A stretch of DNA of 64,000 nucleotides, taken from positions 1-64,000 of IMG/VR virus record IMGVR_UViG_3300048121_001678; one strand, 5' to 3'. A program made the translations under genes and the position numbers. This document shows, in pieces, positions 1,919 to 33,600 of the stretch (its first letter is position 1; each line of letters begins with the position of its first letter). The notes below the pieces were generated by a model, which was given only the letters and a program-made list of their open reading frames with translations, had not been told where the DNA came from and did not search any database.

Positions 1919-1927
1919 TTCTTTTAT

Positions 1928-2389: not shown

Positions 2390-2688
2390 TACATCATTTG
2401 TGTTAACAGGAACGCTAATTTATACCCTCCAAAAGCACCTAATGCTGTTGGTACTGGAAATACTATAAACTTTCCTAAACTTGTTACATACTTAGGTCTA
2501 TTAACTACCCTCCCTAAAAAGAAGTAGTAAACCATATATCCTAATAATACTAATATATCAACTCTCTCTGCAATAAACACTACTAAAATGGCACCAAGTA
2601 GTCCAAATATAAAGTTATCTACAACCGCCGATGATAATTCTGCCCTATCCGTTTGTCTAAACTCTTCTTGTATTTTTTTAATGCTCAT
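2389..2688 (-). CDS. Small multi-pass membrane protein
   Basis: 99 aa with three hydrophobic segments; start overlaps the next gene's stop/start. Confidence 0.7.
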   Translation of the reverse strand: MSIKKIQEEFRQTDRAELSSAVVDNFIFGLLGAILVVFIAERVDILVLLGYMVYYFFLGRVVNRPKYVTSLGKFIVFPVPTALGAFGGYKLAFLLTQMM

Positions 2689-2711
2689 CTTTTTTGGTAT
2701 ATAATTTTACC

Positions 2712-2933
2712 TTACAGGTCAAAGTTTTCTTTAAGTTCCTTGATTAAAGTTTTAATCTCTTCTTTATTAAGGGCGATGTGAGTGAAGAGGTCTTCTTGAC
2801 TTCTCATTGTTAATTGAAGTTTCATACCCTCTTTACCTCCACTGAATCTTGTTAGTGACATTTCAGTGTTCTCCATTTCATTTGTCTTTTGACTATGAAA
2901 TTGACCTTTAAGCGATTTTAATTCGGTTGACAT
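2712..2933 (-). CDS. Hypothetical protein
   Basis: 73-aa ORF; TATATTTG promoter-like element at 2959-2966 on the minus strand. Confidence 0.65.
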   Translation of the reverse strand: MSTELKSLKGQFHSQKTNEMENTEMSLTRFSGGKEGMKLQLTMRSQEDLFTHIALNKEEIKTLIKELKENFDL

Positions 2934-2981
2934 AAACTTTATTTTATTAATTAGAATACAAATATAAAGTTTTTTTACTTA

Positions 2982-3350
2982 TTAACCAAATGTATAATTG
3001 AATATTTTACATTCAGGGTTTAGATTTGTTAAATCAGGAAACGTAACATCACCAATATCATCGTTATCTATATGTGATATATGTAATTCTGTAAAATATT
3101 TTGAGTATTTTTCATAAGTTTTCTTACCTCCTATACACCAATCACACGAAATGTTAAAACTATCTCTCTCATCCACAATTAAAACTCTGTTCTTAAGTGG
3201 TGGGAGACCATTTGCCGTCCTATATCCTACAAGACACCTACTATTAAGGGTTAATACCTTAAAGTGTTTTAAATCCTCTTTATTATGCCATAGTAGTTGG
3301 TCACCTTTACCTATAAACCCTAAATTATTTACTGCAATTATTGCTTTCAT
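2982..3350 (-). CDS. folA: Dihydrofolate reductase (compact, 122 aa)
   Basis: Motifs IIAVNNLGFIG, LLWHNKEDLKHFK, VGYRT, PPLKNR, IGGKKTY, LHISHI and GDVTFP. Confidence 0.9.
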   Translation of the reverse strand: MKAIIAVNNLGFIGKGDQLLWHNKEDLKHFKVLTLNSRCLVGYRTANGLPPLKNRVLIVDERDSFNISCDWCIGGKKTYEKYSKYFTELHISHIDNDDIGDVTFPDLTNLNPECKIFNYTFG

Positions 3351-3352
3351 CT

Positions 3353-3607
3353 TTAAGACCTTGAAGGGTACATCCCCTTAGCACATATAATATATTTAAC
3401 ACCTTTAGTTCCTGATTGTAATGATGGTAAACAATAAAAATCATCATCTTCGGTTCCCCCATAGGTATTACCTAATACTGAGTATAACGCAACATTATCA
3501 TCCTTCATTAGTCTTCGACCATCACATACCATCCATCCATGTGGTTCGTAACTTCCAGCGAACATCACAACCTCACCAATAAAGTGTTCTTCATTCCAAT
3601 TTTCCAT
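3353..3607 (-). CDS. Stand-alone phage tail-collar domain protein
   Basis: FIGEVVMFAGSYEPHGWMVCDGR...ALYSVLGNTYGG...LPSL matches the collar-domain pattern. Confidence 0.8.
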   Translation of the reverse strand: MENWNEEHFIGEVVMFAGSYEPHGWMVCDGRRLMKDDNVALYSVLGNTYGGTEDDDFYCLPSLQSGTKGVKYIICAKGMYPSRS

Positions 3608-3615
3608 AGTTTTAT

Positions 3616-4002
3616 TTAATTACAAAGGTCAGCATTTTCTAAAGTTACATTCCCCCATGTTTCATCGAATAAATAAATCTTAATGTTCTTATCATCTCGG
3701 TAATACGCTTTCTTATACTCACCGTTCTTATCCAAACCTGACCACTCCAAATACTTTACATAACATTCTTTGAAGGATGCCATATCTTGGATAGGTTCGT
3801 CCAAAATAAAATGGTGACCACCATATACCTTTCTGCCGAGATTGTCCTCGTGAGTGGTTCCCTGAAAGGTATATCTATAGTTTTTATTTACTTTATAGGT
3901 ATTCTCACAGGATGATAGTATAAAAATAACCACTATATACAATGCAGTTAGTACTATCCAATTCTTTTCTAAAAACAGTTTAATCTTGTTAATCATTATC
4001 AA
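3616..4002 (-). CDS. Putative lipoprotein
   Basis: Hydrophobic leader ending in a lipobox-like ILSSC. Confidence 0.6.
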   Translation of the reverse strand: MIMINKIKLFLEKNWIVLTALYIVVIFILSSCENTYKVNKNYRYTFQGTTHEDNLGRKVYGGHHFILDEPIQDMASFKECYVKYLEWSGLDKNGEYKKAYYRDDKNIKIYLFDETWGNVTLENADLCN

Positions 4003-4024
4003 TTATTGTTAAAGTTCTCATAAG

Positions 4025-4843
4025 TTATAGTTTAATACCAAGTCCCACACCGATACCAAATCTACCATCGTAACGAACCTGACCAATTAATTCTAAGTAA
4101 TTCCAATGATAAAGGAATCCACCTCGTATACTCATGTTAGTTAATATTTGTTGATTAATCAAGTAAATACCATTCTGACTTTCAGAGGACAAAACATAAA
4201 ACTCATCATAGTACGAGTTATATATCTTCCTGGTAGTAATACCAACAGTCATGTACGGGGAAAAACGTTCCATCGTTCTACCAGCACCAATTGAAAAATC
4301 ACCTTTGGTTTCCACATTACCCGCAGACTCATCACCCCAATCTTCCACTTCCCACGTTGATATATTATCGTAATATGGGTAAATAATTGGTAAGGTTGTG
4401 TGATATTGAATAACCATAAATGTTTCACCACCAGTAATAATATAAGGTGACATCTGACTTTGAAAGGCGTCCTGTTCAACAATAACCCCAAAAGATAACC
4501 TCATAGGTTTACTATTATTTTTCTGAATCAAATCAGAATCCGTAGTCATCACATATTCGTGTCGGTCCCACGTTCTATTTGTATTCCAATAAGGGTAATA
4601 ACCAACATCATATGGGTTATAATAATATGGTGTTCTATTCCATCCATTGTTCCATCTACCTTCATTGATACCATTGTTATATCCGTTCTGATATCCCTGG
4701 TTGTAGTTGTTATTATTCACATTCGTTCTCTGAGATTTTTTCTCTTGAACTTTCTGTATCTTTTGGTCCCTCTCGGACTGAGCAAAAGTGGTGTGTGTAA
4801 AAAACACACATACCACTATTAGTAATAATTTTTTCATATACAT
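4025..4843 (-). CDS. Putative outer-membrane beta-barrel protein
   Basis: Sec signal peptide (MKKLLLIVVCVFF...TFAQ), an N/G/Y-rich segment, alternating strands and a C-terminal beta-signal-like GIGVGLGIKL. Confidence 0.65.
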   Translation of the reverse strand: MYMKKLLLIVVCVFFTHTTFAQSERDQKIQKVQEKKSQRTNVNNNNYNQGYQNGYNNGINEGRWNNGWNRTPYYYNPYDVGYYPYWNTNRTWDRHEYVMTTDSDLIQKNNSKPMRLSFGVIVEQDAFQSQMSPYIITGGETFMVIQYHTTLPIIYPYYDNISTWEVEDWGDESAGNVETKGDFSIGAGRTMERFSPYMTVGITTRKIYNSYYDEFYVLSSESQNGIYLINQQILTNMSIRGGFLYHWNYLELIGQVRYDGRFGIGVGLGIKL

Positions 4844-4849
4844 TTGTTT

Positions 4850-4927
4850 TTAATCTTCAGAGAACTTAGGCTCAGAATATACATCACTATCGTAAAAGTC
4901 TACGAAGTCTTCAAATTGGTCATCCAT
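4850..4927 (-). CDS. 25-aa acidic micro-protein MDDQFEDFVDFYDSDVYSEPKFSED
   Basis: Translated by hand; fills the gap between a terminator and the next gene and has an A/T-rich leader. Confidence 0.45.
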   Translation of the reverse strand: MDDQFEDFVDFYDSDVYSEPKFSED

Positions 4928-5022
4928 AATAATAAGTAGTTTATATTGAATGGTAAAGATAACAAAAAACCCCCACATTTCTGTGAGGGTTAGTTTATAT
5001 TTTATTTTTTATTTTAGATTTG

Positions 5023-5565
5023 TTATTCAGGGCAAATACATGGGTCGGTAAATGGACAAGGACAACCCTCTAAACTTACAGGTGAAATTGAACCTGTTGT
5101 TGCATCTACACTTACAAACCCTTTACTTGTCGTAAAAATATATTGTGCTACGTTGAAACCTGGTTCTAATGGTCTTCTTAATACAACCTCAGACCAATCA
5201 GCAACTCCTTCGACACCTGTACCATATCCAGCATCTAATAATATTTGTTCAGCGTCTTCTAATGTTAGTTTGACAGGTAAATGTATCACCTCATCCTCCA
5301 TAAATGGAGAATTAATAACTTTTGATTTAGTCTCACCCTTAGAATCACACAACACCTCAATGGTAGTATTGTTAATACCAGCGAATACTGATTTAACACC
5401 TGTTAATTCTTTAGTCGCAGTTGACTCATAAAATAAAGCTGTGGTATCAATACCTTTTGCAACTTCCTGTGTTTGATTTACCATCTCATTAAATGTTAAA
5501 TCATTTTGTTGAGAACAACTCATTAAGAGTAATCCCGTAATTAATGTTAATAATGTTTTTTTCAT
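5023..5565 (-). CDS. Putative lipoprotein with Cys-rich C-terminus
   Basis: MKKTLLTLITGLLLMSC lipobox; ends GCPCPFTDPCICPE. Confidence 0.7.
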   Translation of the reverse strand: MKKTLLTLITGLLLMSCSQQNDLTFNEMVNQTQEVAKGIDTTALFYESTATKELTGVKSVFAGINNTTIEVLCDSKGETKSKVINSPFMEDEVIHLPVKLTLEDAEQILLDAGYGTGVEGVADWSEVVLRRPLEPGFNVAQYIFTTSKGFVSVDATTGSISPVSLEGCPCPFTDPCICPE

Positions 5566-5586
5566 TTTCGTTTTTATTTTAATTTA

Positions 5587-7188
5587 TTATATTTCTTCTT
5601 TATCTTTATTTGAACTATCTTTATTTACACCCCTAACGACTTTATTCATGATTTCCTCACTCGAGTTAAACGCATAGTTATCGAAGTTAGCATTAGTTTC
5701 AACCCAATCGAATGAAACAAAAGTATGTTCATTTATCTTAAGTTTAGTTTTCTCTAACCCTTTTAATCTCTTATGTAGGTCTTTACGTATTTCCTTAAAT
5801 TTAGGATTATAAGCTAAATTATTCACCTCATCTTTATCTTCTAAAAGATTATACAATTCGAATTCTTTATAGTAACTACCTAACGCATCAAAATAATAAG
5901 TGTATTTCCATTCTTTAGTTCTGATACTCCTTAATCTATTTGCTGCCAATACCGAAGATGGTAATGACGCAGAACCTGATTTAGTATCATCAAAAGTAAA
6001 TAAGATTTCTTCTTGAACACCTTCTCCTGTTTCAATGATAGGTAATAAACTTACACCTCTAACATCTGTAGGTACATCAACCTTAACCATGTCAGCTAGC
6101 GTTGGGAGGATATCCACTAATGTTGCCAATTCTTGTGATGACTCACCATCAGGGAATAATATAGGATTTGATATCACCATAGGAATTCTCATGTTTTCCT
6201 CATAAGCAACAAAAGCCTTTTGTCTCATACCACCGTGTGACATTCCCATTTCTCCATGGTCAGCCAATCTGAATACGATTGCGTCGTTCGCCAAGTTAAT
6301 GTCTTGGTCGTCATATAACACATCAATAAACTCACCAATCTGAGCATCAATCTTTGTTAACAAATACGCATAGAAGTTAAGGTAGTTCAACTTCATATCG
6401 TCATTCTTAAGAACACCCAACAATCCGTCAGCGGCAATGTTCGTTTGTAATTGAGCCATCGGTTTTTTGTTTCTCAATAATTGTTCGTTAACGGTTGATG
6501 GTAACTCAGGGATAGTTCTTTGTGTATACTCGTCTTCAGTATACCCATAATTAACAAACTTTGGGTAACCCAAAACATCGTGGGGATTTACCAAACTTAA
6601 TACCATACAATATGGTGTCATATCACCATTCTTTCTTCTTTCCCTTACTTGCTCCAAATACTCAATAGCCTCAGCAACATAACGTGCATCGTGGTTAGGA
6701 TAACCACCACCAAAGTTTTCAGGTTTAGCGTCCTCACCAGCATCAGGTCCAATCCAACCTTTAAATCCGTATAATGATATGTCTTTGGCTAATGGGTCAC
6801 CACCATCAGCACCTTTACTTAGGTGCCACTTACCACGGTATTGTACGTCATAACCAATGTCGTCTAATATTCTACCAATATTTGGTGTTTGATTATTTAA
6901 TTGAATCTCACCATCGGAATACACACCACCCTCAGTTAATGTTTGAGTAACCTGATGTTGTGCCGGATATGTCCCTGTAAATAATGTTGACCTACTCGGT
7001 GAACACATACAAGTATTACAAAACGCTCTGTCAAATGAGAATCCGTTTTGTTTTAGTTTTGTTAATGTTGGTAAATTTTCTTTTTCCCAATTATCAGGAA
7101 AATGTTGTGTCGCCCTTTCTTGGTCCGTGATGATAAAAATAATATCAGGTTTGGAGGGTAGTTCTTGTATTTTTTCTTTTAAACCCAT
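5587..7188 (-). CDS. Formylglycine-dependent sulfatase (Cys-type)
   Basis: IIFIITDQ, CSPSRSTLFTG (CxPxR), GKWHL, NPHD, ADHGEM and RIPMVI motifs; no signal peptide. Confidence 0.9.
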   Translation of the reverse strand: MGLKEKIQELPSKPDIIFIITDQERATQHFPDNWEKENLPTLTKLKQNGFSFDRAFCNTCMCSPSRSTLFTGTYPAQHQVTQTLTEGGVYSDGEIQLNNQTPNIGRILDDIGYDVQYRGKWHLSKGADGGDPLAKDISLYGFKGWIGPDAGEDAKPENFGGGYPNHDARYVAEAIEYLEQVRERRKNGDMTPYCMVLSLVNPHDVLGYPKFVNYGYTEDEYTQRTIPELPSTVNEQLLRNKKPMAQLQTNIAADGLLGVLKNDDMKLNYLNFYAYLLTKIDAQIGEFIDVLYDDQDINLANDAIVFRLADHGEMGMSHGGMRQKAFVAYEENMRIPMVISNPILFPDGESSQELATLVDILPTLADMVKVDVPTDVRGVSLLPIIETGEGVQEEILFTFDDTKSGSASLPSSVLAANRLRSIRTKEWKYTYYFDALGSYYKEFELYNLLEDKDEVNNLAYNPKFKEIRKDLHKRLKGLEKTKLKINEHTFVSFDWVETNANFDNYAFNSSEEIMNKVVRGVNKDSSNKDKEEI

Positions 7189-11493: not shown

Positions 11494-12435
11494 TTAATTT
11501 GATAGAGGTGCTTTAATTGTTGGGTGTGATTGATAACCTCTAATCTCATAATCAAACTCACCGTTTAATACATCAACATTGGATAACTCAATCGTTGGTA
11601 AATCATATGACATTCTTCCACATTGTTCGTTCGCTTGGTCAATGTGATTCTTATATAAGTGAGTATCACCTAAGTTCCCCACCAACTCACCTGGTTGATA
11701 ACCTGTCTCCTCACATAACAACAATAGTAATGTTCCATATGATGCAATGTTGAATGGTAAACCTAAGAAGGTGTCAACTGAACGTTGATTCCACATTAGG
11801 GATAGTTTACCTTCAGACACATAACATTGAAATCCATAATGACATGGAGGTAGTACAACCTCGTCCAACTCACCAACATTCCAAGCTGATACCATATGTC
11901 TACGAGAATTAGGATTTTCTTTTAGACCTTTTATTAAGTTTTGAATTTGGTCAATGTACTTAGTACCTTCAACATATGTATCTTCACCCGATAATGGGTC
12001 TTTGAGAGTAGTCTTAATAAGTGATTCAGTTTTCCATTCTCTCCATTGTTTACCATAGATTGGACCCAACTCACCCCACATCTCAGCAAATCTATCCTGA
12101 GTCTTAATCTTCTGAATGAATGACTTAGGACCCATAGCTAATGTTCCCTTGTCTTCTTTGTATCTTTTATAAGCATCACCATTCCAAATGTTACAATCAT
12201 TATCCACCAAATACTTAATGTTGGTATCACCTTTGAGGAACCACTTCAGTTCGGTCATCATGGTCTTAACCGCCATCTTCTTTGTGGTTAACAAAGGAAA
12301 CCCCTCACTCATATCATGACGTATCTGACGACCAAAGACCGATACTGTACCAGTACCTGTACGGTCATCTTTCTCAACACCATTGGTCATGATGTCTTTT
12401 AATAATTCTAAGTAATCTTTATCTAATTTATTCAT
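11494..12435 (-). CDS. thyA: Thymidylate synthase
   Basis: Motifs DDRTGTGT, GFPLLTTKK, ELKWFLKG, LGPIYGKQWR, LPPCH, QRSVDTFLGLPFNIASY and GDTHLY. Confidence 0.97.
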   Translation of the reverse strand: MNKLDKDYLELLKDIMTNGVEKDDRTGTGTVSVFGRQIRHDMSEGFPLLTTKKMAVKTMMTELKWFLKGDTNIKYLVDNDCNIWNGDAYKRYKEDKGTLAMGPKSFIQKIKTQDRFAEMWGELGPIYGKQWREWKTESLIKTTLKDPLSGEDTYVEGTKYIDQIQNLIKGLKENPNSRRHMVSAWNVGELDEVVLPPCHYGFQCYVSEGKLSLMWNQRSVDTFLGLPFNIASYGTLLLLLCEETGYQPGELVGNLGDTHLYKNHIDQANEQCGRMSYDLPTIELSNVDVLNGEFDYEIRGYQSHPTIKAPLSN

Positions 12436-12725: not shown

Positions 12726-13025
12726 CTATTTTCCAATAACTAAATCAGAGTAGTCTAATTTTTCCATACCTGTTAATTCTTCCTCAACCTCATCATACAT
12801 ATAAGCTTTAACTACGGCAACTACGCCCTGTTCAGCTTGAGCCAATTTACTTTCCATCCAATCTTCGATTTGCTCTCCGTCTTCCATCATTTCCCACATC
12901 TTATATGCTAATGTGGCGATGGTGAATAGTTGTTGTTTAGCCATATACGACCCGTCATGTTTTCCTTCTGTCAAGGAAGCTGTCAACCTTTCCAATTGTG
13001 CTTCTGTAAGAATAATTTGTCCCAT
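12726..13025 (-). CDS. Hypothetical protein, probably virion-associated (start re-set to MGQIILTE)
   Basis: TATTTAT at 13045-13051 lies inside the longer ORF call, which favours the downstream ATG; IILTEAQL leader. Confidence 0.7.
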   Translation of the reverse strand: MGQIILTEAQLERLTASLTEGKHDGSYMAKQQLFTIATLAYKMWEMMEDGEQIEDWMESKLAQAEQGVVAVVKAYMYDEVEEELTGMEKLDYSDLVIGK

Positions 13026-13154: not shown

Positions 13155-13664
13155 CTATTCCTTAACTGATGAGTTTAACCAATCAATCACTTCTTCATCT
13201 AGTAGACTTTCTTCAGAGTTAGATAACCCCCAAATACTACCATCGATATTAATTAAATATTTAAAGAAATTCCATTTAGTTTCAAAATCATAACCATATT
13301 TTGATGAACCTTCATTAGTATATTGCAACCAATGCCAAATATCTGAATCTTTAAGAATTACTTTATCCATTAAATAAACATTCGAATGTTCTAAGACCCC
13401 ATACCCATCACAAAAGGTCTTTATTTCATCAATGGTTCCAGGTTCTTGTCCTCCAAAATCATTAGATGGATACAACCATACCGTAACTTTATCCTTATCA
13501 ACAGTTTCTAAGAACTGTTTGAGGTCTTTGTAGTTATTATCCGTATATCCACACTCTGAGGCCACATTGATGACTATGTGTCTCGTGTTTAAAATTTTGG
13601 GGTGAATCATTTCACCACTTTCGGTGATGAGAATCCTATCGTAAAAGTTAGTTATACCTTCCAT
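13155..13664 (-). CDS. Glutathione peroxidase family protein (Cys-type)
   Basis: Motifs VINVASECGYT, YPSNDFGGQEPG and KWNFFKYLIN. Confidence 0.9.
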   Translation of the reverse strand: MEGITNFYDRILITESGEMIHPKILNTRHIVINVASECGYTDNNYKDLKQFLETVDKDKVTVWLYPSNDFGGQEPGTIDEIKTFCDGYGVLEHSNVYLMDKVILKDSDIWHWLQYTNEGSSKYGYDFETKWNFFKYLINIDGSIWGLSNSEESLLDEEVIDWLNSSVKE

Positions 13665-15258: not shown

Positions 15259-15474
15259 TTAAATGGAAACCCCATTCACATCAAATTCGGATTTTAAAGC
15301 TTCCAACTTATCTTTTGCAGTTGCCATTTTGTCAACCATTTCGTCCATCTCCTCTAAATGTTGTGGGTGTTCACCAATCCCAACTGAGTTATGGAAATAC
15401 ACATTTAGTGTTGCCTTTGCAGCTATTAAATCTGCTTCATACTTTTTTACTAACGCTTGATACATTAAATTCAT
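15259..15474 (-). CDS. Hypothetical conserved phage protein
   Basis: 71 aa; YFHNSVGIGEHPQHLEEMD motif typical of T4-like phage small proteins. Confidence 0.7.
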   Translation of the reverse strand: MNLMYQALVKKYEADLIAAKATLNVYFHNSVGIGEHPQHLEEMDEMVDKMATAKDKLEALKSEFDVNGVSI

Positions 15475-15878
15475 TTTAAAATAATTTTTAATAGTTTATT
15501 AAATTGTTCTGTCATTGGTGAAGGTAATTCATTTTTACCAAAATATCCACACTCAGTATGTTCATCTCCATCTTTCGCAGTTGTTAAGTTAGGGTGAATC
15601 TCTTCATCACAATCATAAAGAAAACAGTACATTTCACCTTTAATTTTTGAACCATCTCTGTTTGTTCTCTTAATAAGACCACAGAACTCAGGTTCATCAA
15701 TTAATTTAAAATCAGTTTCTTCATAAAATTCTCTCATCGCACCTAACAAAGGACTTTCACCCTCTTCAATACTTCCTGCTGGACATGACCAGTGACCAGG
15801 TAATGGCCCTTCATTATTCCGTTTACATAATAATACTTTATTATCACATCTAACTATAATACCTCCGTATTTTTTCAT
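15471..15878 (-). CDS. Nudix hydrolase
   Basis: Nudix box GSIEEGESPLLGAMREFYEETD. Confidence 0.9.
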   Translation of the reverse strand: MKKYGGIIVRCDNKVLLCKRNNEGPLPGHWSCPAGSIEEGESPLLGAMREFYEETDFKLIDEPEFCGLIKRTNRDGSKIKGEMYCFLYDCDEEIHPNLTTAKDGDEHTECGYFGKNELPSPMTEQFNKLLKIILK

Positions 15879-15906: not shown

Positions 15907-16263
15907 ATGAAGATAACTATAGGAGATAATATTATTAAAGTCAAACTTTGCGTGACAAAAGATTCAATAATTAAAGGAATGCAAGGTCAAAAGTTTAATG
16001 ATGAGTTCCAAGGTATGTATTTCTTAATGCCAAGTAAAGGTGAACAATCTTTTTGGATGTACGATTGTATAATACCTTTAGATATTATATTCATCAATGG
16101 TGATGATATTGACACCATTCACGAAAATTGTCCAATATGTACTAATGAGTTGGAATGTGAATCCTATACGGGTTATGGTGACAAGGTATTAGAATTACCA
16201 GCAGGTATGTCAAAACAACTTGGTATAAAAAAAGGAGACAATGTCTCCTTCTCTTTATTTTAA
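15907..16263 (+). CDS. DUF192 family protein
   Basis: GMYF, SFWMYDCIIPLDIIFI and VLELPAG motifs. Confidence 0.85.
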   Translation: MKITIGDNIIKVKLCVTKDSIIKGMQGQKFNDEFQGMYFLMPSKGEQSFWMYDCIIPLDIIFINGDDIDTIHENCPICTNELECESYTGYGDKVLELPAGMSKQLGIKKGDNVSFSLF

Positions 16264-18453
16264 TTGACTAAGTACTGTTGAGGTTTCAATTCCAACAATG
16301 CCGTCATCCTCAATCTTATTATCTTTTTGAACCTTTTTAATCGACTCTCTTGTTTTTGACCCAAAACGACCGTCAACACCGTCTTTATTCGGACCAAAGT
16401 CTCCAAGGTCATAACCATTATCCACTAATATCTGCTGAATCTCTTCAACACCTTTACCTCTTGAACCTAAAGATATTAACTCACTATTGTCACCATTACT
16501 AATAATATCTGCAATTGTTAAATCTTGTTTTACGACATTTTTTTCTTTCTTATATTCATCGTCTTTAAGTTCTATGTTGGAGACGTGTAAATGATGCTTA
16601 TGACTACCATCTGGCATAAACCATAGAACCGCTCTTTTGTGTTTACCTTCACTATTTCTATTATAACCTAATGACTCTAATGCCGAACATAATCTATCAC
16701 CCGCACTAATAAAACCTTCTCTGTTATTTCTATACGATGAAAGTTTTTTCTCATTAGGGTTATTTAAGTCTTGAAGTTTCGAAATATCTATAGCCCTTTC
16801 AATATGGTGTCTACTTACTTTACCTCCTTTAGTATTCTTACCATGACCCGTTTTAGCCCAGCTTAGTTCTGCATTTACATTTGCAATTTCAGCGGCCACA
16901 CCAATATCATTAATTAGTTCTTCAGGTAAATAATCATTCTTCGCCCTTCTACTAACAAATAAGTTAGGTGAAATTTCATCACCTACCCTCATCATATTTT
17001 CTGTTACTATTTTTTTAGTTTTTTTTTTAAAAGACTCTTTCAAATTTTTTGAACCCTCAATCTTTTCTTTAAGCTTTCTATAGAATTCTTCTCCAATCAT
17101 CTTAGAGAATTTAACGTATGGTGCATCACCTGAATCTTTATTGTATTTGTACTTACCTTGTGGTGGTCTCTTACTCCTACCGAAATAATTAAGTGCAGCA
17201 ATGTTAGTAATACATTTGTGACCACCTGAGTTAGCCTGTATCATTTCCCAAGCCGGAACACCTAAACCATCTAATAAACTCATCTCATCGTCAGTTAACT
17301 TACTGAATGGTTTATCCATTATCGCCTTTAAGTTTTCCATATACTTTTCTCCACCTTCCATAGACTTAATCTTATCACCGTAGAATGCTTCTAAATCTGC
17401 GTTTGTAAAACCTACAGACTCCTCACCAAAACTCTTTGATGACTCAGAAATCCATTTGATTGTTGATAATGGTATAATCTTTTCTCTTAGTTTAGATTCC
17501 CACTTACCCAATACTTCCTGTGCGATATCACCTAAGTTAACACCTTTAAGTTCTCTCTCACCCTTAAAAGGATTACAAGACGCTTGTACCAATCCCATCG
17601 GCCAAACCGTAATAAGGAAATCAGCATCGGGATGTAATTTAAATGGTGTATACCTATCGTATGAACCTGGTTTAAACATTCTACCACCACCGTATTGATA
17701 AAGAATACCATCTTTATAACTTAACTTAGGGTCCTTACTTCTTTGGTCAACATAGTCCTCTTGATTCGCAGACATCATCAACGCATTTGCATAGTTTTCT
17801 CTATCAGCTATTCTCCTAATATTTTGGAATATGTTTAATAAGGATGGTTTTGAAGTCATAACTAACTCCTCCATAAAACCTGGTTTGTTTTTATAAGCCA
17901 ACATAAGTTTGTTTGCCGCCAAACCTAACGCCATCTTATTTTTCTGTAGTGATTTGTCTTTATCTAACTTAAAGATAAAGTTCATAATGTCCTGTGGCTT
18001 TAAACCATACTTAGCAAAGTCGGCAGAATCAACCGTTGATATTAATCTAATGTCATCAGCAGTAAAAATATCTTTAGGTGACATTATCTGTGATAGTGTT
18101 TCAACATTTGAACGTGAAGACCTAAATGAGGTTGATGTATCACCCTCAACTCCACTCTGTGAATCGTGGTGGTCAGTGTGAACAACAAACATTGGCTTTC
18201 CATGTGCAAAATCAACTAACACTGGCATTGTATCTCCTTGAGCATCTTGTTTCTTCACTGCAAATTCCTTATCACCATATTGGATAATCTCACTATCAAC
18301 AACTTTAATACCGTTATTTTCTAAATAGTTCTTCATTGCTAATGCAGTTGTAACCCCATCTAAATCCTGATGAAAGTATATTTTAGCCTTTTTATATCTC
18401 TTGGATAGGTCATTTATATTACGTAGACCAGACTCGTTAATTAACTTTTTCAT
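16255..18453 (-). CDS. Fusion: DHH-family phosphoesterase + M15-like peptidase + peptidoglycan-binding domain
   Basis: HQDLDG, VDFAH, TDHHD and SGGH (DHH/DHHA1); SRH...AIDI...HHLHVS (M15-like); LGSRGKGVEEIQQIL...DGRFGSKT...DDGIVGIET (PG-binding). Confidence 0.7.
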   Translation of the reverse strand: MKKLINESGLRNINDLSKRYKKAKIYFHQDLDGVTTALAMKNYLENNGIKVVDSEIIQYGDKEFAVKKQDAQGDTMPVLVDFAHGKPMFVVHTDHHDSQSGVEGDTSTSFRSSRSNVETLSQIMSPKDIFTADDIRLISTVDSADFAKYGLKPQDIMNFIFKLDKDKSLQKNKMALGLAANKLMLAYKNKPGFMEELVMTSKPSLLNIFQNIRRIADRENYANALMMSANQEDYVDQRSKDPKLSYKDGILYQYGGGRMFKPGSYDRYTPFKLHPDADFLITVWPMGLVQASCNPFKGERELKGVNLGDIAQEVLGKWESKLREKIIPLSTIKWISESSKSFGEESVGFTNADLEAFYGDKIKSMEGGEKYMENLKAIMDKPFSKLTDDEMSLLDGLGVPAWEMIQANSGGHKCITNIAALNYFGRSKRPPQGKYKYNKDSGDAPYVKFSKMIGEEFYRKLKEKIEGSKNLKESFKKKTKKIVTENMMRVGDEISPNLFVSRRAKNDYLPEELINDIGVAAEIANVNAELSWAKTGHGKNTKGGKVSRHHIERAIDISKLQDLNNPNEKKLSSYRNNREGFISAGDRLCSALESLGYNRNSEGKHKRAVLWFMPDGSHKHHLHVSNIELKDDEYKKEKNVVKQDLTIADIISNGDNSELISLGSRGKGVEEIQQILVDNGYDLGDFGPNKDGVDGRFGSKTRESIKKVQKDNKIEDDGIVGIETSTVLSQLK

Positions 18454-18454: not shown

Positions 18455-19258
18455 TTATATCTCTTTATAAAAATCGTGGTTACCTATTGTTTTAACCAAT
18501 TTAAATTTTTCTTTATTGTTCCACCAATCATTATCATCAGTAGCTCGCTTTTTATTAACATAATGGGTTGCACCACCAATATCTATAGTTGAATCATTAT
18601 TCACTATAGATAAAAAATCACCCAACTCACTTTTCTTCACACCTAATTTACCTTGATTACATCTTGGGTTACTACCAAACCCTTTATCATTCCAATAAGA
18701 AAATTGTTTAGGTCTAAGTGCTTCACCAGCCATTCTTGCTTTCAATGAAAGACTTGAATCACCATTCCTAAGACCCCTATTTTTTAATATGGTATAAACC
18801 GCTTTCATACCTTCGTTACTCTCACCTCTAGCTTCACCCCATAGTGTGGCAGCTAAAATATCCTCGTTAGAATAATATGCGTTATATCTATCAGGGTCCT
18901 CAATTAATGAAATTGTCTTTTTACCCAACGCAGAACCATCAACATCACGTGAACATGATTGTGATTTATAAAAGTTACTAATAGCCTCGGCAGTTTTACC
19001 ACCATAGTAACCTAATAACCCATCCCACTTAAGGTACCCTAAGTCCTTTAATTTTTTTTGAATTTTAATAATACCTGAGTTAGGGTTTGAATTACAATAC
19101 CCTTTCTTTATTACCTGACCATTTTTTAAATCTTCATAAGTAACTAACTCATCTTCTTCTTTACCCTCAGGGCAAGGACTTTTTTTAGTTTGTTCAGACA
19201 AACCATAAAGTTTAAAAATGTCGTTCTTTTCTGACTCAGTAATAATAAAACGTGGCAT
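18455..19258 (-). CDS. PG-binding domain + SleB-type cell wall hydrolase
   Basis: IIKIQKKLKDLGY...GYYGGKT; AATLWGEARGE, PKQFSYWN, GATHY and IGNHDFY. Confidence 0.85.
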   Translation of the reverse strand: MPRFIITESEKNDIFKLYGLSEQTKKSPCPEGKEEDELVTYEDLKNGQVIKKGYCNSNPNSGIIKIQKKLKDLGYLKWDGLLGYYGGKTAEAISNFYKSQSCSRDVDGSALGKKTISLIEDPDRYNAYYSNEDILAATLWGEARGESNEGMKAVYTILKNRGLRNGDSSLSLKARMAGEALRPKQFSYWNDKGFGSNPRCNQGKLGVKKSELGDFLSIVNNDSTIDIGGATHYVNKKRATDDNDWWNNKEKFKLVKTIGNHDFYKEI

Positions 19259-19300
19259 AAAATACTTTTAATATAAATATAACAAACAACAAAAAACCCC

Positions 19301-19462
19301 TTATTTTTTAAAGGGGTCTTTCGTTAATGATACTGAACAGGCGATTATATTGTCAATCCATACTTTTTCAGGTTCCGATACATTTTCTCTATTGAACTTC
19401 CTAACTCGATTATTTGAAGAGGTAATAACAATATTATTGTTATCTATAACCTTAATCAACAT
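19301..19462 (-). CDS. Hypothetical 53-aa protein (not in ORF track)
   Basis: Translated by hand, MLIKVIDNNNIVITSSNNRVRKF...; ATG overlaps the end of the MTase gene. Confidence 0.55.
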   Translation of the reverse strand: MLIKVIDNNNIVITSSNNRVRKFNRENVSEPEKVWIDNIIACSVSLTKDPFKK

Positions 19463-20327
19463 TTAATTCTAATTCAACTTGTTTTTGTTTATCCTTATAA
19501 TCATTAATTCTTTGTATCGCAACTTCACAATAGTTTGGTGAGATATCACACCCTAACCATGGTCTACCTAACATCTCAGATGCCAAACATGTTGTACCCG
19601 AACCATTAAATGGGTCAAAAACTAAATCCTCTTTATACGAAAGAATTTTAATTGCTCTATAAGGAATATCTAAAGAAAATGTTGCCTTGGTTTTTGTCTG
19701 AGTATCTGCAAAATAATTCCATTGTCCGAAAACCAACGACATGAAGTCTTTCTTATCTTTATCATCGTATACCAATTTCTTTCTAAACTCACCCTCAATC
19801 TTCTCGTTTGGTACCATCTGATGCTCACCTTCCCATTGAGGAGTTCCTTTAACCTGTTTCTTAGAAACGTTCTTATACGCTAAGATGACACACTCCTTTG
19901 GGTTATAGATATATGGTGCTGATGGACTCATCCAACTTCCCCACGCAGTAGTCTTACTTCTATGTGGTGAACTTTCCTCTAAATCTACAATACCAAAAAA
20001 TCCAAATCCCAATTGTTTCATTACCTGCCAAACCTCAGATGAGAAGTATATACGACCACCTTTCTTTTGACGGTTAATTTCATAGGGAATGTTCAATGCA
20101 ATACGACCATCGTCCCTTAGTACTCTGTGTGCGGCTTGTAACCATTCACGAGTAAACCTCATATACTCATCAAAGTATTTATCATCATCCCAACTATCAT
20201 AATCAATCCCAACACCATAAGGTGGTGAGGTAACAATTAAGTCAACTGATTTCTCAGGCATCTCTTTCATGAACTTCACTGTGTCTGAACAGTGAATATC
20301 ACCAATTAATTCTTTCATTTCTTTCAT
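19452..20327 (-). CDS. DNA methyltransferase, N4C/N6A beta class
   Basis: Catalytic VTSPPY motif precedes the SAM-binding DPFNGSGTT motif. Confidence 0.92.
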   Translation of the reverse strand: MKEMKELIGDIHCSDTVKFMKEMPEKSVDLIVTSPPYGVGIDYDSWDDDKYFDEYMRFTREWLQAAHRVLRDDGRIALNIPYEINRQKKGGRIYFSSEVWQVMKQLGFGFFGIVDLEESSPHRSKTTAWGSWMSPSAPYIYNPKECVILAYKNVSKKQVKGTPQWEGEHQMVPNEKIEGEFRKKLVYDDKDKKDFMSLVFGQWNYFADTQTKTKATFSLDIPYRAIKILSYKEDLVFDPFNGSGTTCLASEMLGRPWLGCDISPNYCEVAIQRINDYKDKQKQVELELNVD

Positions 20328-30628: not shown

Positions 30629-33600
30629 TTATAATAAACCTTTTTCTTTAGCAGTTTTTTCTAACTGTGTGATTTCAATTTCTTTACTTAACAAAATAGT
30701 ATTCTGTTGTTGTAATGCTTCTGTTACAACGGCAATTAAAATAGGGTAATTAACAAGCTTAGTACCATCAACTGACTCACTTATCGCTTGAGGAAAATAC
30801 TCCTCAACTTCCTGTGCAATAAAACCAACATTAGGAATGTTTGTAGTTTCTTGAGGAATACCATTAACTACTTCTCTCCATAAAAATGAAACACCTCTCA
30901 TATTGAGAATGCGGTCTAAAGCATCTGACATCACTCTATAGTTTTTCTTTAACCTTCTATCAGATGGTGGTCCTGGTGCACCAACATATCCTTTTGGTCC
31001 TTTATTACCTTGTGGTCCCGCATATCCTTTTGGTCCTTTAGCCCCTGGTTCTGCAGCTGGACCCTGTGGTCCGTAGTTCCCTTGTGGACCCTTAGGTCCG
31101 TCATTACCTGTTGCACCTCTATTACCTTTAAGACCCGTTGGTCCTTTTATTCCTTTATCTCCTGTTGGTCCTGTTGAACCTCCTGGACCTTGTGGTGATG
31201 CCCCTGTTGAACCTTGTGGTCCTCTGACTCCCTGTGTACCTCTAAAACCTTTTGGTCCACCAACACCTTTTGTACCTTTTGGTCCTGGATTCGCATATCC
31301 TTTTGGTCCTTTGTCGTTAGATGTCGGCCCTGTTGAACCTTGGTCACCAATGTCAATCGGTCCTTTATACCCTTTAACTCCTTTAACACCTACTGGTCCT
31401 GTTGAACCACCTGGTCCTGGATTGTTAGCACCTGTTGGCCCTGTTGAACCACCTGGACCTCTAACTCCCTGAGCACCTCTCGGTCCTTGTACCTTTGGTC
31501 CTTTATCACCACCTGGTCCTTGTGGTGACGCTCCTTGAGCACCTCTACCACCTTTCGGTGAATTACCTGTACCACCGACATTACCTCTGAAACCTTTTTC
31601 ACCAACATAACCTTTTGGCCCTTTAGTACCTTTATCTCCGACACCACCAGTATTACCTCTGTTACCTGTTGCACCTTTATAACCTTTTGGCCCTTTTGTA
31701 CCATCAGGTGCGGTTGGACCCTTGTTACCTTTTGGCCCTTTATCATTAGATGTTGGCCCTGTTGAACCTCCACCACCTATATCAATGTTACCTTTAAAAC
31801 CTTTAACCCCTTTTGTACCTACTGGTCCTGTTGAACCACCTGGTCCCGGATTATTAGCACCTGTTGGCCCTGTCGAACCTTGTCCTCCTCTAGCACCTTG
31901 TGACCCTCTTGGTCCTTGTACCTTTGGTCCTTTATCACCCGTAGAACCATTTTGATTAGAACCTTGATTACCTCTATTACCTTTCGGTGAGTTACCTTGT
32001 GGTCCTTTGGCACCTCTGAAACCTTTTGACCCTACAAGTCCTTTTGGTCCATCAGGTCCGGTTGCACCTCTATTACCTTGTGGGCCTGTAGTTCCACCTG
32101 TCCCTCGATTACCTTTTGGTCCATCAGGTGCAGTGTATCCTTTAGCACCTTTCTGTCCTTTATCACCACCTGGTCCTTGTGGTCCAGGATTTGCAGAACC
32201 CGTAGAACCTCCCGGTCCTTGTGTTGAATCACCTACAGGTCCTTGTAGACCTTGGCTACTTGCACCTTGAGGTCCTTGACCACCTTGACCACCAGTGTTA
32301 CCTTGTGCACCTTGTGGTGATGACCCTGTTGAACCTATTGGTCCTGTTGGTGATGACCCTGTTGAACCACCTGGTCCTTGTGGTGAATTACCCTGTGGTC
32401 CCTTGGGTCCTTGGTTCCCTTGGTAACCTTTTACACCTTTAGGTCCTTGTGAACCTTTGTAACCCTTTGGTCCTTTTGACCCTGCAGGTGCGATTGGCCC
32501 TTTTATACCTTTAGCACCTTGTCCACCCTTTTGTCCTTTTTGTCCCGTAGGTCCTGTTGAACCGCCGGGTCCTTGTGGACCTGGATTAGCGAATCCTTTT
32601 GGTCCTTTTGGCCCTGTATTAGATTGCCCTTTTTGTCCTTTAGGTCCTTGATTATTATCACCAGTAGCACCTGTTGAACCTCCACCTCCTGTATTACCTC
32701 TGTTACCTTGTGGTGAACTACCTGTAGCTCCTCTATTACCTTGTGGTGATGAACCTTGTGGTCCTTTAGCCCCCTGAGGTGAGTTACCTTGTGGTCCTTT
32801 AGTACCTTTATTACCTTTATTACCTTTATTACCTTTTGGTCCGTCAACACCCGTAGCACCTTTCGTACCTTTAGCTCCGTCAGCACCAGTAGTTCCTTTT
32901 TGACCTTTCTGACCTTTAGGTGCAGTTGGACCTTTTATACCTTTCTGACCTTTTTGTCCAGTAGGTCCTTGTGGCCCTTGATTACTATCTCCTGTTGAAC
33001 CTCCCGGTCCTTGTGTTGAATCACCTACAGGACCTTGACTACCTTGATTACTATCACCTGTCCCACCTTGGTTTCCTTGACTACCCTGTGAACCTTGTGG
33101 ACCCTGTGGTGATGCTCCTGTTGAACCTCCTGGACCTTGTGGTGATGCTCCTGTTGAACCTGTTGCCCCTTTTGGTGAGTTACCTTGGACTCCTTTGGAA
33201 CCAGTTCCACCTTTCTGTCCTTTATTACCCTTCGCACCTTGTGAACCTTTAAAACCTTTTAGACCTTTTGGTCCTGCAGGTGCTGTTGGCCCCTTGATTC
33301 CTTTTTGACCCGCAGGTGCTGTTGGTCCTTTATCGCCACCAGGTCCTTGTAAACCAACAGGTCCTTGTGCACCTTGATTTGAATCACCAATATCACCTTG
33401 TGGTCCTTGATTTGAATCACCTGTAGGACCTTTTGGTCCCACATTAACGTCACCCTGACCACCTTGTGGTCCTTGAGTTGACGACCCTACGTTACCTTGT
33501 GAGCCCTGAGTCCCTCTATTACCTTGTGGGCCCTGTGGTGATGCACCTGTTGAACCTTGTGGTCCTTGTGGTGAATTACCTTGAGAACCTTGTGGTCCTT

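What the first reader, a model, noticed from the sequence alone, without database searches (positions are those of the whole stretch)
16255..18453. DHH phosphoesterase fused to an M15-like peptidase and a PG-binding domain, with a possible protease site in the linker
Seen: a DHH/DHHA1 module of about 470 aa, a linker NLKESFKKKTKKIVTE (about 17000-17050), then an SRH..AID..HxH module and a PG-binding module. The gene is directly downstream of the SleB hydrolase gene and has its own KLINE leader. Established: DHH enzymes hydrolyse oligonucleotides, pAp or cyclic dinucleotides, and M15 enzymes cut peptidoglycan stems. Inference: a polyprotein cleaved in the capsid into a wall-degrading entry enzyme and a nuclease that may destroy nucleotide immune signals.
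Basis: partly seen in the sequence, partly recalled or inferred. Interest (0 to 1): 0.6.

Follow-up and report, generated by a model that had tools for sequence, protein, structure and literature searches.

The report
Capsid-targeted DHH enzyme fused to wall hydrolase
A 297-kb T4-like jumbo phage encodes one protein that joins a nucleotide-cutting DHH enzyme to a zinc cell-wall peptidase, and its start and domain junction look like sites for the phage's own head protease, so it is probably loaded into the capsid, cut into pieces and delivered to the host with the DNA; none of this has been tested at the bench.

Summary
ORF 16255-18453 (minus strand, 732 aa) has five parts:
- a 7-residue leader, MKKLINE;
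- a linker with two h-x-E sites;
- a LAS (Hedgehog/M15-like) zinc peptidase with invariant H549, D556, H621, H623;
- a PG_binding_1 domain.

The capsid-cleavage idea gains real but indirect support:
- The genome encodes a T4-type prohead protease (T4 gp21 cuts after L/I-x-E), and the capsid protein's predicted maturation site reads LINE|A.
- Across the family, leaders of 0 to more than 30 aa end in h-x-E just before a fixed core start (SGLRNI). Some copy the T4 IPIII capsid-targeting sequence.
- 61 of 70 fusion junctions carry h-x-E, against 14 expected.
- Stand-alone forms stop exactly at the junction.
- Non-homologous neighbouring hydrolases share one leader.
- A leaderless PGB+amidase elsewhere in the genome is the likelier endolysin.

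Distant relatives carry SAM lyase or SET domains instead of wall hydrolases. The best fit is therefore an undescribed DHH-based form of injected "polyvalent" or internal head proteins. Substrate and packaging remain untested.

The parts
16255..18453 (-). Whole gene, 732 aa plus stop: leader, DHH/DHHA1, linker, LAS peptidase, PG_binding_1
18433..18453 (-). N-terminal leader M1-E7 (MKKLINE). Candidate capsid-targeting propeptide with a predicted protease site L4-I5-N6-E7|S8
   Evidence: Residues 1-8 are disordered in the AF2 model (pLDDT<50). The family core always starts at SG[IL][RQ][ND]I; leaders are 0 to >30 aa long and 69 of 88 contain h-x-E. The capsid protein's own site is LINE|A. No alternative start exists.
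17047..18432 (-). DHH/DHHA1 phosphoesterase module, residues 8-469. Motif I H28-x-D30-x-D32, II D81, III D94-H95-H96, IV D142, DHHA1 G410-G411-H412. Helical insert about 150-240. Long C-terminal helix 445-474
16996..17046 (-). Inter-domain linker, residues 470-486 (NLKESFKKKTKKIVTEN), with two candidate sites: L471-K-E473|S and V483-T-E485|N
   Evidence: The start of the C-terminal model is disordered. Every fusion architecture carries 1-2 h-x-E motifs at this position, and stand-alone forms end here. 61 of 70 junctions have the motif, against a background mean of 14.1.
16552..16965 (-). LAS-fold (Hedgehog/DD-peptidase, M15-like) zinc peptidase domain, residues about 497-634. Predicted zinc ligands H549, D556, H623, with H621
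16258..16488 (-). PG_binding_1 domain, residues about 656-732
18455..19258 (-). Tightly coupled upstream gene: SleB-type Hydrolase_2 plus PG_binding_1, with a ~24-aa leader MPRFIITESEKNDIFKLYGLSEQ
   Evidence: Pfam. The same leader sits on non-homologous T4-lysozyme-type proteins at the same position in relatives. It is a top hit of the leader HMM. One base separates its stop from the next ATG.

Best explanation
Proposal: the gene encodes a multi-enzyme 'polyvalent' protein of a T4-like jumbo phage. Its short N-terminal leader directs it into the assembling prohead.

Processing: the phage's gp21-type prohead protease then cuts after Glu7, removing the leader. It also cuts in the linker after Glu473 and/or Glu485. 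This would free two products:
(a) a metal-dependent DHH/DHHA1 phosphoesterase;
(b) a zinc LAS-type peptidoglycan peptidase carrying a PG-binding domain.
Both would stay in the head and leave with the DNA at infection.

Roles: the peptidase would attack the wall locally during entry, together with the leader-bearing SleB-type glycan hydrolase from the coupled upstream gene. The DHH enzyme would act in the cytoplasm from the first moment of infection on short phosphodiester substrates. The candidates are pGpG, pApA, pAp or nanoRNA, possibly cyclic di- or oligonucleotide signals.

Shown here:
- the domain identities and intact catalytic residues;
- the presence of the protease type;
- conservation of the leader and junction motifs;
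- the modular swapping of cargo.

Inferred only:
- packaging;
- cleavage;
- ejection;
- the substrates.
For: Domains.

Protease and head type:
- Peptidase_S77 at 213.4-214.2 kb, E 2e-25.
- Gp23-type capsid protein.
- T4 gp21 cuts after L/I-X-E. The CTS is the first 10 aa of IPIII. The same review suggests the CTS may be a general way for T4-like phages to load varied proteins into the head (PMC9026906; PMC9958956).
- The capsid protein carries ...SHLINE|AANAS about 60 residues from its N-terminus.

Leader:
- Residues 1-8 are disordered.
- In 88 representatives the core starts at SG[IL]RNI. Leaders run from 0 to more than 30 aa, and some proteins start M-SGIRNI.
- 69 of 88 leaders contain h-x-E, often in tandem.
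- P0182 (MAKTYKEYLAE) and the huge-phage homologs (MISKYNQFINE) mirror the T4 sequence MKTYQEFIAE.

Junction:
- Every fusion type carries 1-2 h-x-E motifs directly after the module, and stand-alone forms end there.
- 61 of 70 junctions have the motif against a background of 14.1 (maximum 23 in 500 draws).
- Among representatives at or below 50% identity the figures are 20 of 28 against 6.4.

Portable leader:
- Nearly the same ~24-aa leader sits on SleB-type and T4-lysozyme-type enzymes at the same locus.
- A leader HMM finds 4 further ORFs, all N-terminal.

Endolysin elsewhere: a leaderless PGB1+Amidase_2 protein at 237.3-238.2 kb.

Cargo in distant relatives: SAM lyase/DUF3293 and SET domains, which fit injected effectors.

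Precedent: polyvalent proteins combine nucleotide-signalling and peptidoglycan-attacking domains, including PF07486 and DD-peptidases (PMC5512222).

Co-occurrence: huge phages that carry the module also have S77-like hits.
Against: - There is no proteomic, expression or biochemical evidence. The lineage is known only from metagenomes.
- L/I-x-E is a low-information motif in an I/L/E/K-rich proteome. A loose [LIVFMY]-x-E pattern is barely enriched at N-termini genome-wide, 111 against about 90 per 12-residue bin.
- The tighter N-terminal patterns and the HMM seeds were chosen after seeing the data.
- This protein's leader has 7 residues. It lacks the aromatic residues at positions 4 and 7 that drive T4 IPIII targeting.
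- The second linker site has Val, not Leu or Ile, at P3.
- Family members are related, so the junction counts are not independent events.
- In T4 the entry lysozyme sits on the tail tip, and internal head proteins go to the cytoplasm. A head-packaged wall peptidase therefore has no T4 precedent.
- The gene lies about 190 kb from the head genes, among nucleotide-metabolism genes (NUDIX, ThyA, DHFR).
- The best structural relatives act on linear dinucleotides or pAp, not on cyclic immune signals.
Confidence: 0.5

Rival explanations
1. Unprocessed cytoplasmic two-function protein. The DHH part recycles nanoRNA or pAp for phage nucleotide supply during infection. The LAS+PGB part acts as an accessory endolysin once a holin opens the membrane. 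The h-x-E motifs are only composition or linker features.
For: - The architecture resembles endolysins, and the C-terminus hits PHROG 'endolysin' families.
- The neighbours are nucleotide-metabolism genes: NUDIX, ThyA, DHFR.
- The gene lies far from the head module.
- The loose motif is barely enriched at N-termini genome-wide.
Against: - A conventional leaderless PGB1+Amidase_2 endolysin candidate exists elsewhere.
- The junction motif persists across unrelated downstream domains, and stand-alone forms stop exactly there.
- Leader length varies around a fixed core start, and some leaders resemble the T4 CTS.
- SAM-lyase and SET cargo in relatives does not fit a lysis role.
Confidence: 0.2
2. 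Tail- or baseplate-associated virion lysin. The DHH-like module serves mainly as a structural adaptor that anchors exchangeable wall hydrolases to the tail tip.
For: - A conserved N-terminal module with swapped C-terminal hydrolases is typical of virion-associated lysins.
- No lysozyme domain (PF00959) was found anywhere in the genome.
- The only hub-like ORF, with a sub-threshold Phage_base_V hit at E 0.03, has no detected muralytic domain.
- Tail-fibre genes lie about 12 kb away.
Against: - All DHH/DHHA1 catalytic residues are invariant over the whole family, which points to an enzyme rather than a scaffold.
- Many members are stand-alone or carry non-wall cargo.
- The leader and junction motifs match the head protease, not tail assembly.
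Confidence: 0.12
3. The N-terminal leaders are recognition tags for some other machine, for example the ClpA-type unfoldase that is core to this phage lineage. Alternatively they are 5' coding-region features that favour translation. On either view they are not capsid-targeting or cleavage signals.
For: - ClpA is listed among the core genes of the moraphage lineage (PMC12619734).
- The codons used in the leaders are AT-rich.
- The GSHPx-like ORF 13155-13664 has an ILITE|SG-like string that is not conserved in its relative, where it reads ILITQND. This shows that chance matches occur.
Against: - The same motif recurs internally at domain junctions, where neither translation initiation nor an N-terminal tag explains it.
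- It matches the capsid protein's maturation site and the experimentally defined T4 CTS.
Confidence: 0.08

Closest known systems
T4 internal head proteins and Alt (CTS-targeted, gp21-processed, ejected with the DNA)
   Same: - The genome has the same protease family (S77) and capsid type.
- The N-terminal leader is short and ends in L/I-x-E.
- The cargo is diverse and poorly conserved, as is typical of host take-over or anti-defence proteins.
- Alt is cut at both termini (PMC9026906).
   Different: - The cargo is a 462-aa DHH/DHHA1 enzyme plus a wall peptidase, and the predicted cut lies between domains.
- This protein's leader has 7 aa and lacks the Tyr4/Phe7 targeting residues.
- No T4 internal protein is a peptidoglycan hydrolase.
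- Nothing here has been shown experimentally.
Polyvalent proteins of phages and conjugative elements (Iyer et al. 2017, PMC5512222)
   Same: - Domains of disparate activity sit in one polypeptide: nucleotide-directed and peptidoglycan-directed.
- Architectures vary around shared domains.
- Injection with the DNA and proteolytic processing are predicted.
- PF07486 and DD-peptidase domains are listed among their wall-attacking modules.
   Different: - DHH is not mentioned anywhere in that paper's text (0 occurrences).
- Processing is predicted here to be in trans by the prohead protease, not by an in-cis zincin-like peptidase.
- The protein is much smaller (732 aa) than the very large (>2,000 aa) examples described there.
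Stand-alone DHH/DHHA1 phosphodiesterases: PggH, NrnA/Pde2, TM1595, Rv2837c, archaeal pAp phosphatase
   Same: - Two-domain fold with all catalytic motifs.
   Different: - Sequence identity is only 12-16%.
- The module has about 150 extra residues of helical inserts and a long C-terminal helix.
- It is phage-encoded, leader-tagged and fused to cargo.
- The substrate is unknown.
Streptomyces albus Zn D-Ala-D-Ala carboxypeptidase (M15A, 1lbu) and bacterial Hedgehog-like peptidases
   Same: - The zinc signature is H-x6-D ... H-x-H.
   Different: - The domain order is reversed, with PG_binding_1 C-terminal here.
- No Pfam M15 model reaches threshold.
- Bond specificity is unknown.
Jumbo-phage DHH phosphodiesterases predicted to counter cyclic-nucleotide immunity (Iyer et al. 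2021, PMC7824862)
   Same: A DHH-superfamily enzyme in a jumbo phage. The same counter-signal hypothesis was raised there on comparative grounds.
   Different: That paper notes them in a small number of phages and does not describe leaders, wall-hydrolase fusions or capsid targeting. Whether those proteins belong to this family was not tested.

Membership tests
DHH/DHHA1 phosphoesterase superfamily | Motifs I (DxD), II (D), III (DHH) and IV (D) in the DHH domain | tested here: met
   D30-x-D32, D81, D94-H95-H96 and D142 are invariant in 35 sequences down to 28% identity.
DHH/DHHA1 phosphoesterase superfamily | GGGH-type motif in the DHHA1 domain | tested here: met
   S409-G410-G411-H412. G, G and H are invariant.
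DHH/DHHA1 phosphoesterase superfamily | Pfam DHH (PF01368) at or above its gathering score | tested here: not met
   This sequence scores 18.9-19.6 bits against a cut-off of 28.1. 34 of 35 relatives hit at E<0.01, best 8e-7. No DHHA1 model hit was listed. Superfamily placement therefore rests on motifs and fold.
DHH/DHHA1 phosphoesterase superfamily | Two-domain DHH + DHHA1 fold | tested here: met
DHH/DHHA1 phosphoesterase superfamily | Metal-dependent phosphoesterase activity and substrate class (nanoRNA/pAp, cyclic nucleotides or ssDNA) | not testable with these tools
   Needs enzymology. Structural ranking favours the PggH/pAp-phosphatase type over RecJ by about 4 Z units, which does not decide the substrate.
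LAS metallopeptidases (MEROPS clan MD; M15 / Hedgehog N-domain) | Zinc ligands H-x(3-6)-D and a distal H (H-x-H or E-x-x-H) | tested here: met
   H549-x6-D556 and H621-x-H623 are invariant across two subfamilies that are otherwise 17-23% identical.
LAS metallopeptidases (MEROPS clan MD; M15 / Hedgehog N-domain) | LAS fold | tested here: met
LAS metallopeptidases (MEROPS clan MD; M15 / Hedgehog N-domain) | A Pfam M15 model (PF02557, PF08291, PF13539) above threshold | tested here: not met
   There is no hit for this sequence. Relatives give only weak M15_3 (0.039), M15_4 (0.019) and VanY (0.16) hits. HH_signal reaches 8.7e-7 in the sister subfamily. 'M15-like' therefore holds at superfamily level only.
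PG_binding_1 | Pfam PF01471 above its gathering score, and the three-helix fold | tested here: met
T4-type CTS-bearing internal head protein | The genome encodes a gp21-type (S77) prohead protease and a Gp23-type capsid protein | tested here: met
   PF03420 at 86.5 bits and PF07068 at 207.5 bits.
T4-type CTS-bearing internal head protein | Short N-terminal propeptide ending in L/I-x-E | tested here: met
   M-K-K-L-I-N-E|S. The leader is disordered in the model. The boundary is conserved family-wide. The capsid protein's site is LINE|A.
T4-type CTS-bearing internal head protein | IPIII-like targeting residues (aromatic at positions 4 and 7 of the CTS) | tested here: not met
   They are absent from this protein's 7-aa leader. 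They are present in relatives: P0182 MAKTYKEYLAE, L002 MISKYNQFINE, P0192 MVRKYSGFVNE.
T4-type CTS-bearing internal head protein | Physical presence in the head, cleavage by the prohead protease, and ejection | not testable with these tools
   The lineage is uncultured. tblastn against the held phage records matched the DHH module only in uncultured huge phages.
Polyvalent proteins (PMC5512222) | Two or more domains of disparate biochemical activity in one polypeptide, with variable architectures around shared domains | tested here: met
   Here DHH is joined to LAS and PGB. Relatives join DHH to M23, GH19, M23+GH19, SET or SAM lyase.
Endolysin (holin-dependent lysis enzyme) | It is the phage's dedicated muralytic lysis enzyme | tested here: inconclusive
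   A separate leaderless PGB1+Amidase_2 protein exists. No holin or spanin was searched for, so a lysis role for this gene is not excluded.

The most novel reading that the evidence does not exclude
The DHH module is a general capsid-loading carrier in marine T4-like jumbo and huge phages. Its CTS-type leader draws it into the prohead, and whatever effector is fused behind it (wall hydrolases, SAM lyase, SET methyltransferase) goes in with it. The prohead protease then separates the parts. The DHH enzyme, delivered ready-made with the DNA, destroys host cyclic di- or oligonucleotide signals (CBASS, type III CRISPR, c-di-AMP) before the host can respond.
Probability: 0.2. Interest if true: 0.82.

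Novelty: new variant of a known kind. Interest (0 to 1): 0.62.

Why it matters
If the reading is right, it extends the T4 system of capsid-targeted, protease-processed, injected proteins. That system would now cover a large and abundant group of uncultured marine jumbo phages that probably infect Bacteroidota.

It would also identify a widespread enzyme family as injected cargo. The family comprises 380 clusters at 50% identity, and the word search returned more than 3,700 proteins. It is a modular platform on which phages swap wall-degrading and anti-defence domains.

It gives concrete, cheap tests:
- predicted mature N-termini for metaproteomics;
- three predicted cleavage sites for a co-expression assay;
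- a purifiable enzyme to test on immune signalling nucleotides.

It would also supply a natural leader and linker set for loading foreign proteins into large capsids.

Tried and rejected
- PDB sequence searches with the N-terminal module found nothing related. The single-sequence search matched only the PG-binding domain, and the family profile gave only chance-level hits. Structure was needed.
- NCBIfam gave only sub-threshold RecJ N-terminal hits.
- PHROGs recognised only the PG-binding end, as 'endolysin'. It gave nothing useful for neighbouring large ORFs, the hub-region ORFs or the other leader-bearing ORFs.
- A loose [LIVFMY]-x-E pattern showed almost no N-terminal enrichment. The tighter patterns were chosen after seeing the data, so their P values are descriptive only.
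- My first junction statistic was inflated because the window included the module's own LKEKI. It was discarded and recomputed.
- One search was a mistaken, too-short query.
- I took the 519-aa ORF at 203.5 kb for a gp5-like hub by eye. Only a sub-threshold Phage_base_V hit supports this (E 0.03) and Gp5_OB gave no hit. The argument 'the hub lacks a lysozyme, so an ejected lysin is needed' is therefore kept weak.
- A Sec or Tat export route was rejected by inspection: the N-terminus has no hydrophobic stretch.
- RecJ-type ssDNA exonuclease was considered as the DHH subtype. RecJ cores score about 4 Z units below PggH and the pAp phosphatase, but this does not exclude it.
- I did not run complex prediction, because I make no binding claim. 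I did not use the read-mapping tools, because they cannot show packaging.
Full report
WHAT IS THERE

The window is the first 64 kb of a 297,164-bp virus record judged 99% complete. GC content is 34%. ORF 16255..18453 on the minus strand encodes 732 aa. The upstream SleB-type gene (18455..19258) ends in TAA; one base later comes the ATG of this gene. Codons 2-27 contain no ATG, GTG or TTG. Met1 is therefore the only start that keeps catalytic motif I, and the leader MKKLINE is really encoded.

N-TERMINAL MODULE (residues 8-469)

- On its own this sequence only grazes Pfam DHH (E 0.0019, 18.9 bits, cut-off 28.1) and NCBIfam RecJ. A family profile finds nothing related in PDB sequences.
- The exhaustive search finds 380 cluster representatives at E<=0.001. 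The word search returned more than 3,700 proteins.
- In a 35-sequence alignment reaching 28% identity, the following are invariant: H28, D30, D32, D81, D94-H95-H96 and D142, which are motifs I-IV; G410-G411-H412, the DHHA1 motif; and also R267, Y268, N294, P295, K333 and E337.
- 34 of the 35 sequences hit Pfam DHH, best E 8e-7.
- The AF2 model is confident (pLDDT 88.4, pTM 0.88), and only residues 1-8 fall below pLDDT 50.
- Foldseek's listed matches are all DHH/DHHA1 proteins: DhhP, TM1595, NrnA/Pde2, GdpP, PggH, bacterial and archaeal RecJ.
- The module is therefore an intact DHH/DHHA1 phosphoesterase, enlarged by helical inserts and a long C-terminal helix (445-474). The substrate cannot be read from this evidence.

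C-TERMINAL HALF

- The middle domain has no Pfam hit of its own.
- H549, D556, H621 and H623 are invariant across two subfamilies that are otherwise about 20% identical.
- Five members of the sister subfamily hit HH_signal (8.7e-7), and four hit Peptidase_M15_3 weakly.
- The family profile aligns its S-x-H-x6-D block with Sonic and Indian hedgehog N-domains at E about 0.004.
- 'M15-like' is therefore correct at the LAS superfamily level. Membership of a particular M15 family was tested and not met.

WHAT KIND OF PHAGE

- The genome has a T4-type prohead protease (Peptidase_S77, 86.5 bits) and a Gp23-type capsid protein (207.5 bits).
- The window itself carries three collagen-repeat + S74-chaperone tail-fibre genes, glutamine synthetase, DnaJ, ThyA, DHFR, NUDIX, DUF192 and an N6/N4 DNA methylase.
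- Size, gene content and Bacteroidota-style signal peptides fit the recently named 'moraphages': up to 307 kb, T4-type core genes including the prohead core protease, glutamine synthetase, DnaJ/DnaK, and predicted Bacteroidota hosts (PMC12619734).
- That paper does not mention this gene. The lineage assignment is my inference.

THE FAMILY IS MODULAR

- Close relatives (57-98% identity in the module) fall into three groups: the module alone (467-471 aa); the module followed by M23+PGB, GH19+PGB, M23+GH19+PGB or an unassigned domain; or the present LAS+PGB arrangement.
- Synteny is conserved: DNA methylase, then a wall glycosidase gene, then the DHH gene, then DUF192 on the opposite strand, then NUDIX ... 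ThyA.
- The upstream glycosidase is T4-lysozyme-type (PF00959) in the relatives and SleB-type here. Yet the leaders are nearly the same: L011 has MPRFIITESEKRDIFNLYGLSEQ and the window has MPRFIITESEKNDIFKLYGLSEQ.
- In the relative with a stand-alone DHH gene, a separate M23 peptidase gene with its own leader (MDFINILKDVIQEQ) lies a few kb away. The window has no gene at that position and instead carries a peptidase fused to DHH.
- More distant members carry a SET domain (P0158), SAM lyase/DUF3293 (P0211, P0224) or PG_binding_1 (P0159).
- The homologs in 634-735-kb uncultured phages have unrelated tails.

IS IT A CAPSID-TARGETED, PROTEASE-CUT PROTEIN?

Established knowledge:
- T4 gp21 cuts after L/I-X-E.
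- The first 10 residues of IPIII (MKTYQEFIAE) suffice to load proteins into the prohead. Residues 4 and 7 matter for targeting, and residues 8 and 10 for processing.
- The CTS has been proposed as a general device by which T4-like phages load varied proteins into the head.
- Alt is trimmed at both ends.
- Sources: PMC9026906, PMC9958956, PMC5694885 and PMC8442874.

Found here:
1. The capsid protein reads ...SHLINE|AANASDSG about 60 residues in, followed by ...FPIVRRVF. From my memory of T4, this corresponds to the gp23 site at Glu65|Ala66. It is the same L-I-N-E as in MKKLINE|SG.
2. In 88 representatives with complete N-termini, the conserved core always begins at SG[IL][RQ][ND]I. What precedes it varies from nothing (M-SGIRNI) to more than 30 residues. 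69 of the 88 leaders contain h-x-E, often in tandem (for example MRDLIIQVITEESKKLLKE|SG). Several mirror the T4 CTS: P0182 MAKTYKEYLAE, P0192 MVRKYSGFVNE, L002 MISKYNQFINE.
3. At the junction, every fusion type has one or two h-x-E motifs directly after ...KEKIxxSK, such as GLNES-VLNEA, NINES-LIKES, and here NLKES...IVTEN. Stand-alone forms end there, at ...SKSE.
4. With the module's own LKEKI excluded, 61 of 70 non-identical junctions have the motif in the next 20 residues. Random windows of the same proteins give a mean of 14.1, with a maximum of 23 in 500 draws. For representatives at or below 50% identity the figures are 20 of 28 against 6.4, maximum 13.
5. An HMM built from six longer leaders in this genome finds four more ORFs. 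All four hits are at the N-terminus; one is at an internal Met that is probably the true start. The next hits are much weaker.
6. The three huge phages that carry the module have S77-like hits at E 1e-4 to 7.5e-6. These are below the curated cut-off, but there were none in the 14 control genomes.

Cautions:
- The motif is short, and the proteome is rich in I, L, K and E.
- The loose pattern is barely enriched at N-termini.
- My tighter patterns and the HMM seeds were chosen after looking at the data.
- Related sequences are not independent events.
- One look-alike, ILITE|SG in the GSHPx-like ORF, is not conserved in its relative.
- This protein's own leader lacks the aromatic targeting residues.

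WHICH ENZYME LYSES THE CELL?

- Only three proteins in the genome have PG_binding_1: this one, the SleB-type neighbour, and a leaderless PGB1+Amidase_2 protein at 237,298-238,179. The last looks like an ordinary endolysin.
- The two leader-bearing enzymes are thus free for a virion role.
- No PF00959 lysozyme or Gp5_OB domain was found.
- The only hub-like ORF has a sub-threshold Phage_base_V hit and no detected muralytic domain. This evidence is weak.

MOST LIKELY MECHANISM (confidence about 0.5 for the whole chain)

1. The leader takes the protein into the prohead core.
2. The S77 protease removes the leader and cuts the linker.
3. The DHH enzyme and the LAS-PGB peptidase stay in the head and leave with the DNA.
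4. The peptidase, with the SleB-type glycan hydrolase, opens the wall locally.
5. The DHH enzyme acts at once in the cytoplasm on short phosphodiesters.

The domain identities are shown here. The processing logic is supported by comparison only. Packaging, ejection and substrates are inferred. The main rivals are an unprocessed cytoplasmic or lysis protein (0.2), a tail-borne lysin with a DHH adaptor (0.12), and a different meaning for the leaders (0.08).

COMPARISON WITH WHAT IS KNOWN

- In mechanism it is closest to T4 internal proteins and Alt.
- In architecture it is closest to the 'polyvalent proteins' of Iyer et al. (PMC5512222). Those are predicted to be injected with the DNA. They combine nucleotide-signalling or metabolism domains with peptidoglycan-attacking domains, including PF07486 and DD-peptidases, and they are often processed.
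- DHH does not occur in that paper's text.
- The jumbo-phage survey from the same group notes DHH phosphodiesterases in a few jumbo phages and predicts a counter-signal role. It describes no leaders, fusions or capsid targeting (PMC7824862).
- I therefore rate this a new variant of a known kind: a DHH-centred, CTS-tagged, modular cargo family, abundant in marine metagenomes and not described in the library I could search.

VERDICT

- Observation: confirmed.
The cleavage and capsid idea is strengthened. The immune-signal idea is open.
- Interest: 0.62.

Noticed in passing
window 30629-43677 (-): Three giant ORFs of 1352, 1315 and 1619 aa with collagen triple-helix repeats and a C-terminal Peptidase_S74 intramolecular chaperone. 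They are likely tail fibres. They account for the GC jump to about 47% and the strong AT skew, against a ~33% background.
   Followed up: partly
window 190-579 (+), 12726-13025 (-), 18455-19258 (-); genome 69018-69809 (+), 206549-206800 (+), 231438-232598 (-), 233306-234373 (-), 248368-249042 (+), 286254-286643 (-), 290279-290563 (-): A ~22-aa N-terminal leader family, roughly M-K-K-x-I-x-L-T-E-S-x-L-x-x-I-I-x-R-V-I-x-E, on at least 10 otherwise unrelated ORFs of unknown function. HMM hits are essentially confined to N-termini. PHROGs is blank for them. These are candidate capsid-loaded proteins.
   Followed up: partly
genome 206549-206800 (+) and 207543-209183 (-), next to the head genes: Two ORFs with leader-like starts (MRKIRITEEQLEQIVKRV..., MSKYILSED...) followed by long lysine runs. 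They resemble small basic internal head proteins.
   Followed up: no
L004 (LR756501.1) 1438-5591; L003 3507-3989: In the 642-735-kb uncultured phages, ORFs next to the DHH homolog also start with IPIII-like strings: MLKNYWTYIKES, MLRYFDYIKEST, MIKEFHNFALNEE, MRYLKYFEDLEE. This suggests many CTS-tagged proteins in those genomes.
   Followed up: no
P0158, P0211, P0224 (distant family members, not in the window): The DHH module is fused to a SET domain or to SAM lyase/DUF3293 instead of wall hydrolases. SAM lyase is the family of the T3 anti-restriction enzyme; that last point is from my own knowledge.
   Followed up: partly
window 13155-13664 (-): A glutathione-peroxidase-like ORF (PF00255). Its N-terminal ...RILITESG string looks like a site but is ILITQNDG in the relative L008. 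This is a caution that short h-x-E matches arise by chance.
   Followed up: yes
window 45482-46612 (-), 58691-59629 (-), 11494-12435 (-), 2982-3350 (-), 15471-15878 (-), 19452-20327 (-): Glutamine synthetase, a full DnaJ, thymidylate synthase, DHFR, NUDIX and an N6/N4 DNA methylase. This gene content matches the 'moraphage' lineage (PMC12619734).
   Followed up: partly
window 4025-4843 (-), 5023-5565 (-), 48150-50708 (-): ORFs with N-terminal signal or lipoprotein-like peptides ending ...FAQ or ...SCS, a style typical of Bacteroidota. This fits the predicted host phylum.
   Followed up: no
window 19287-19356 (-): A 16-bp-stem terminator-like hairpin with a T-run, and an 11-of-12 sigma-70-like promoter match, lie just upstream of the SleB-type gene. 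The SleB-type and DHH genes may therefore form their own two-gene unit. Promoter-like matches overall were not above the shuffled expectation.
   Followed up: no
window 15907-16263 (+): A DUF192 gene (E 9.4e-20) converges on the DHH gene and overlaps its 3' end by 9 bases. The arrangement is conserved in relatives. Its function is unknown.
   Followed up: no
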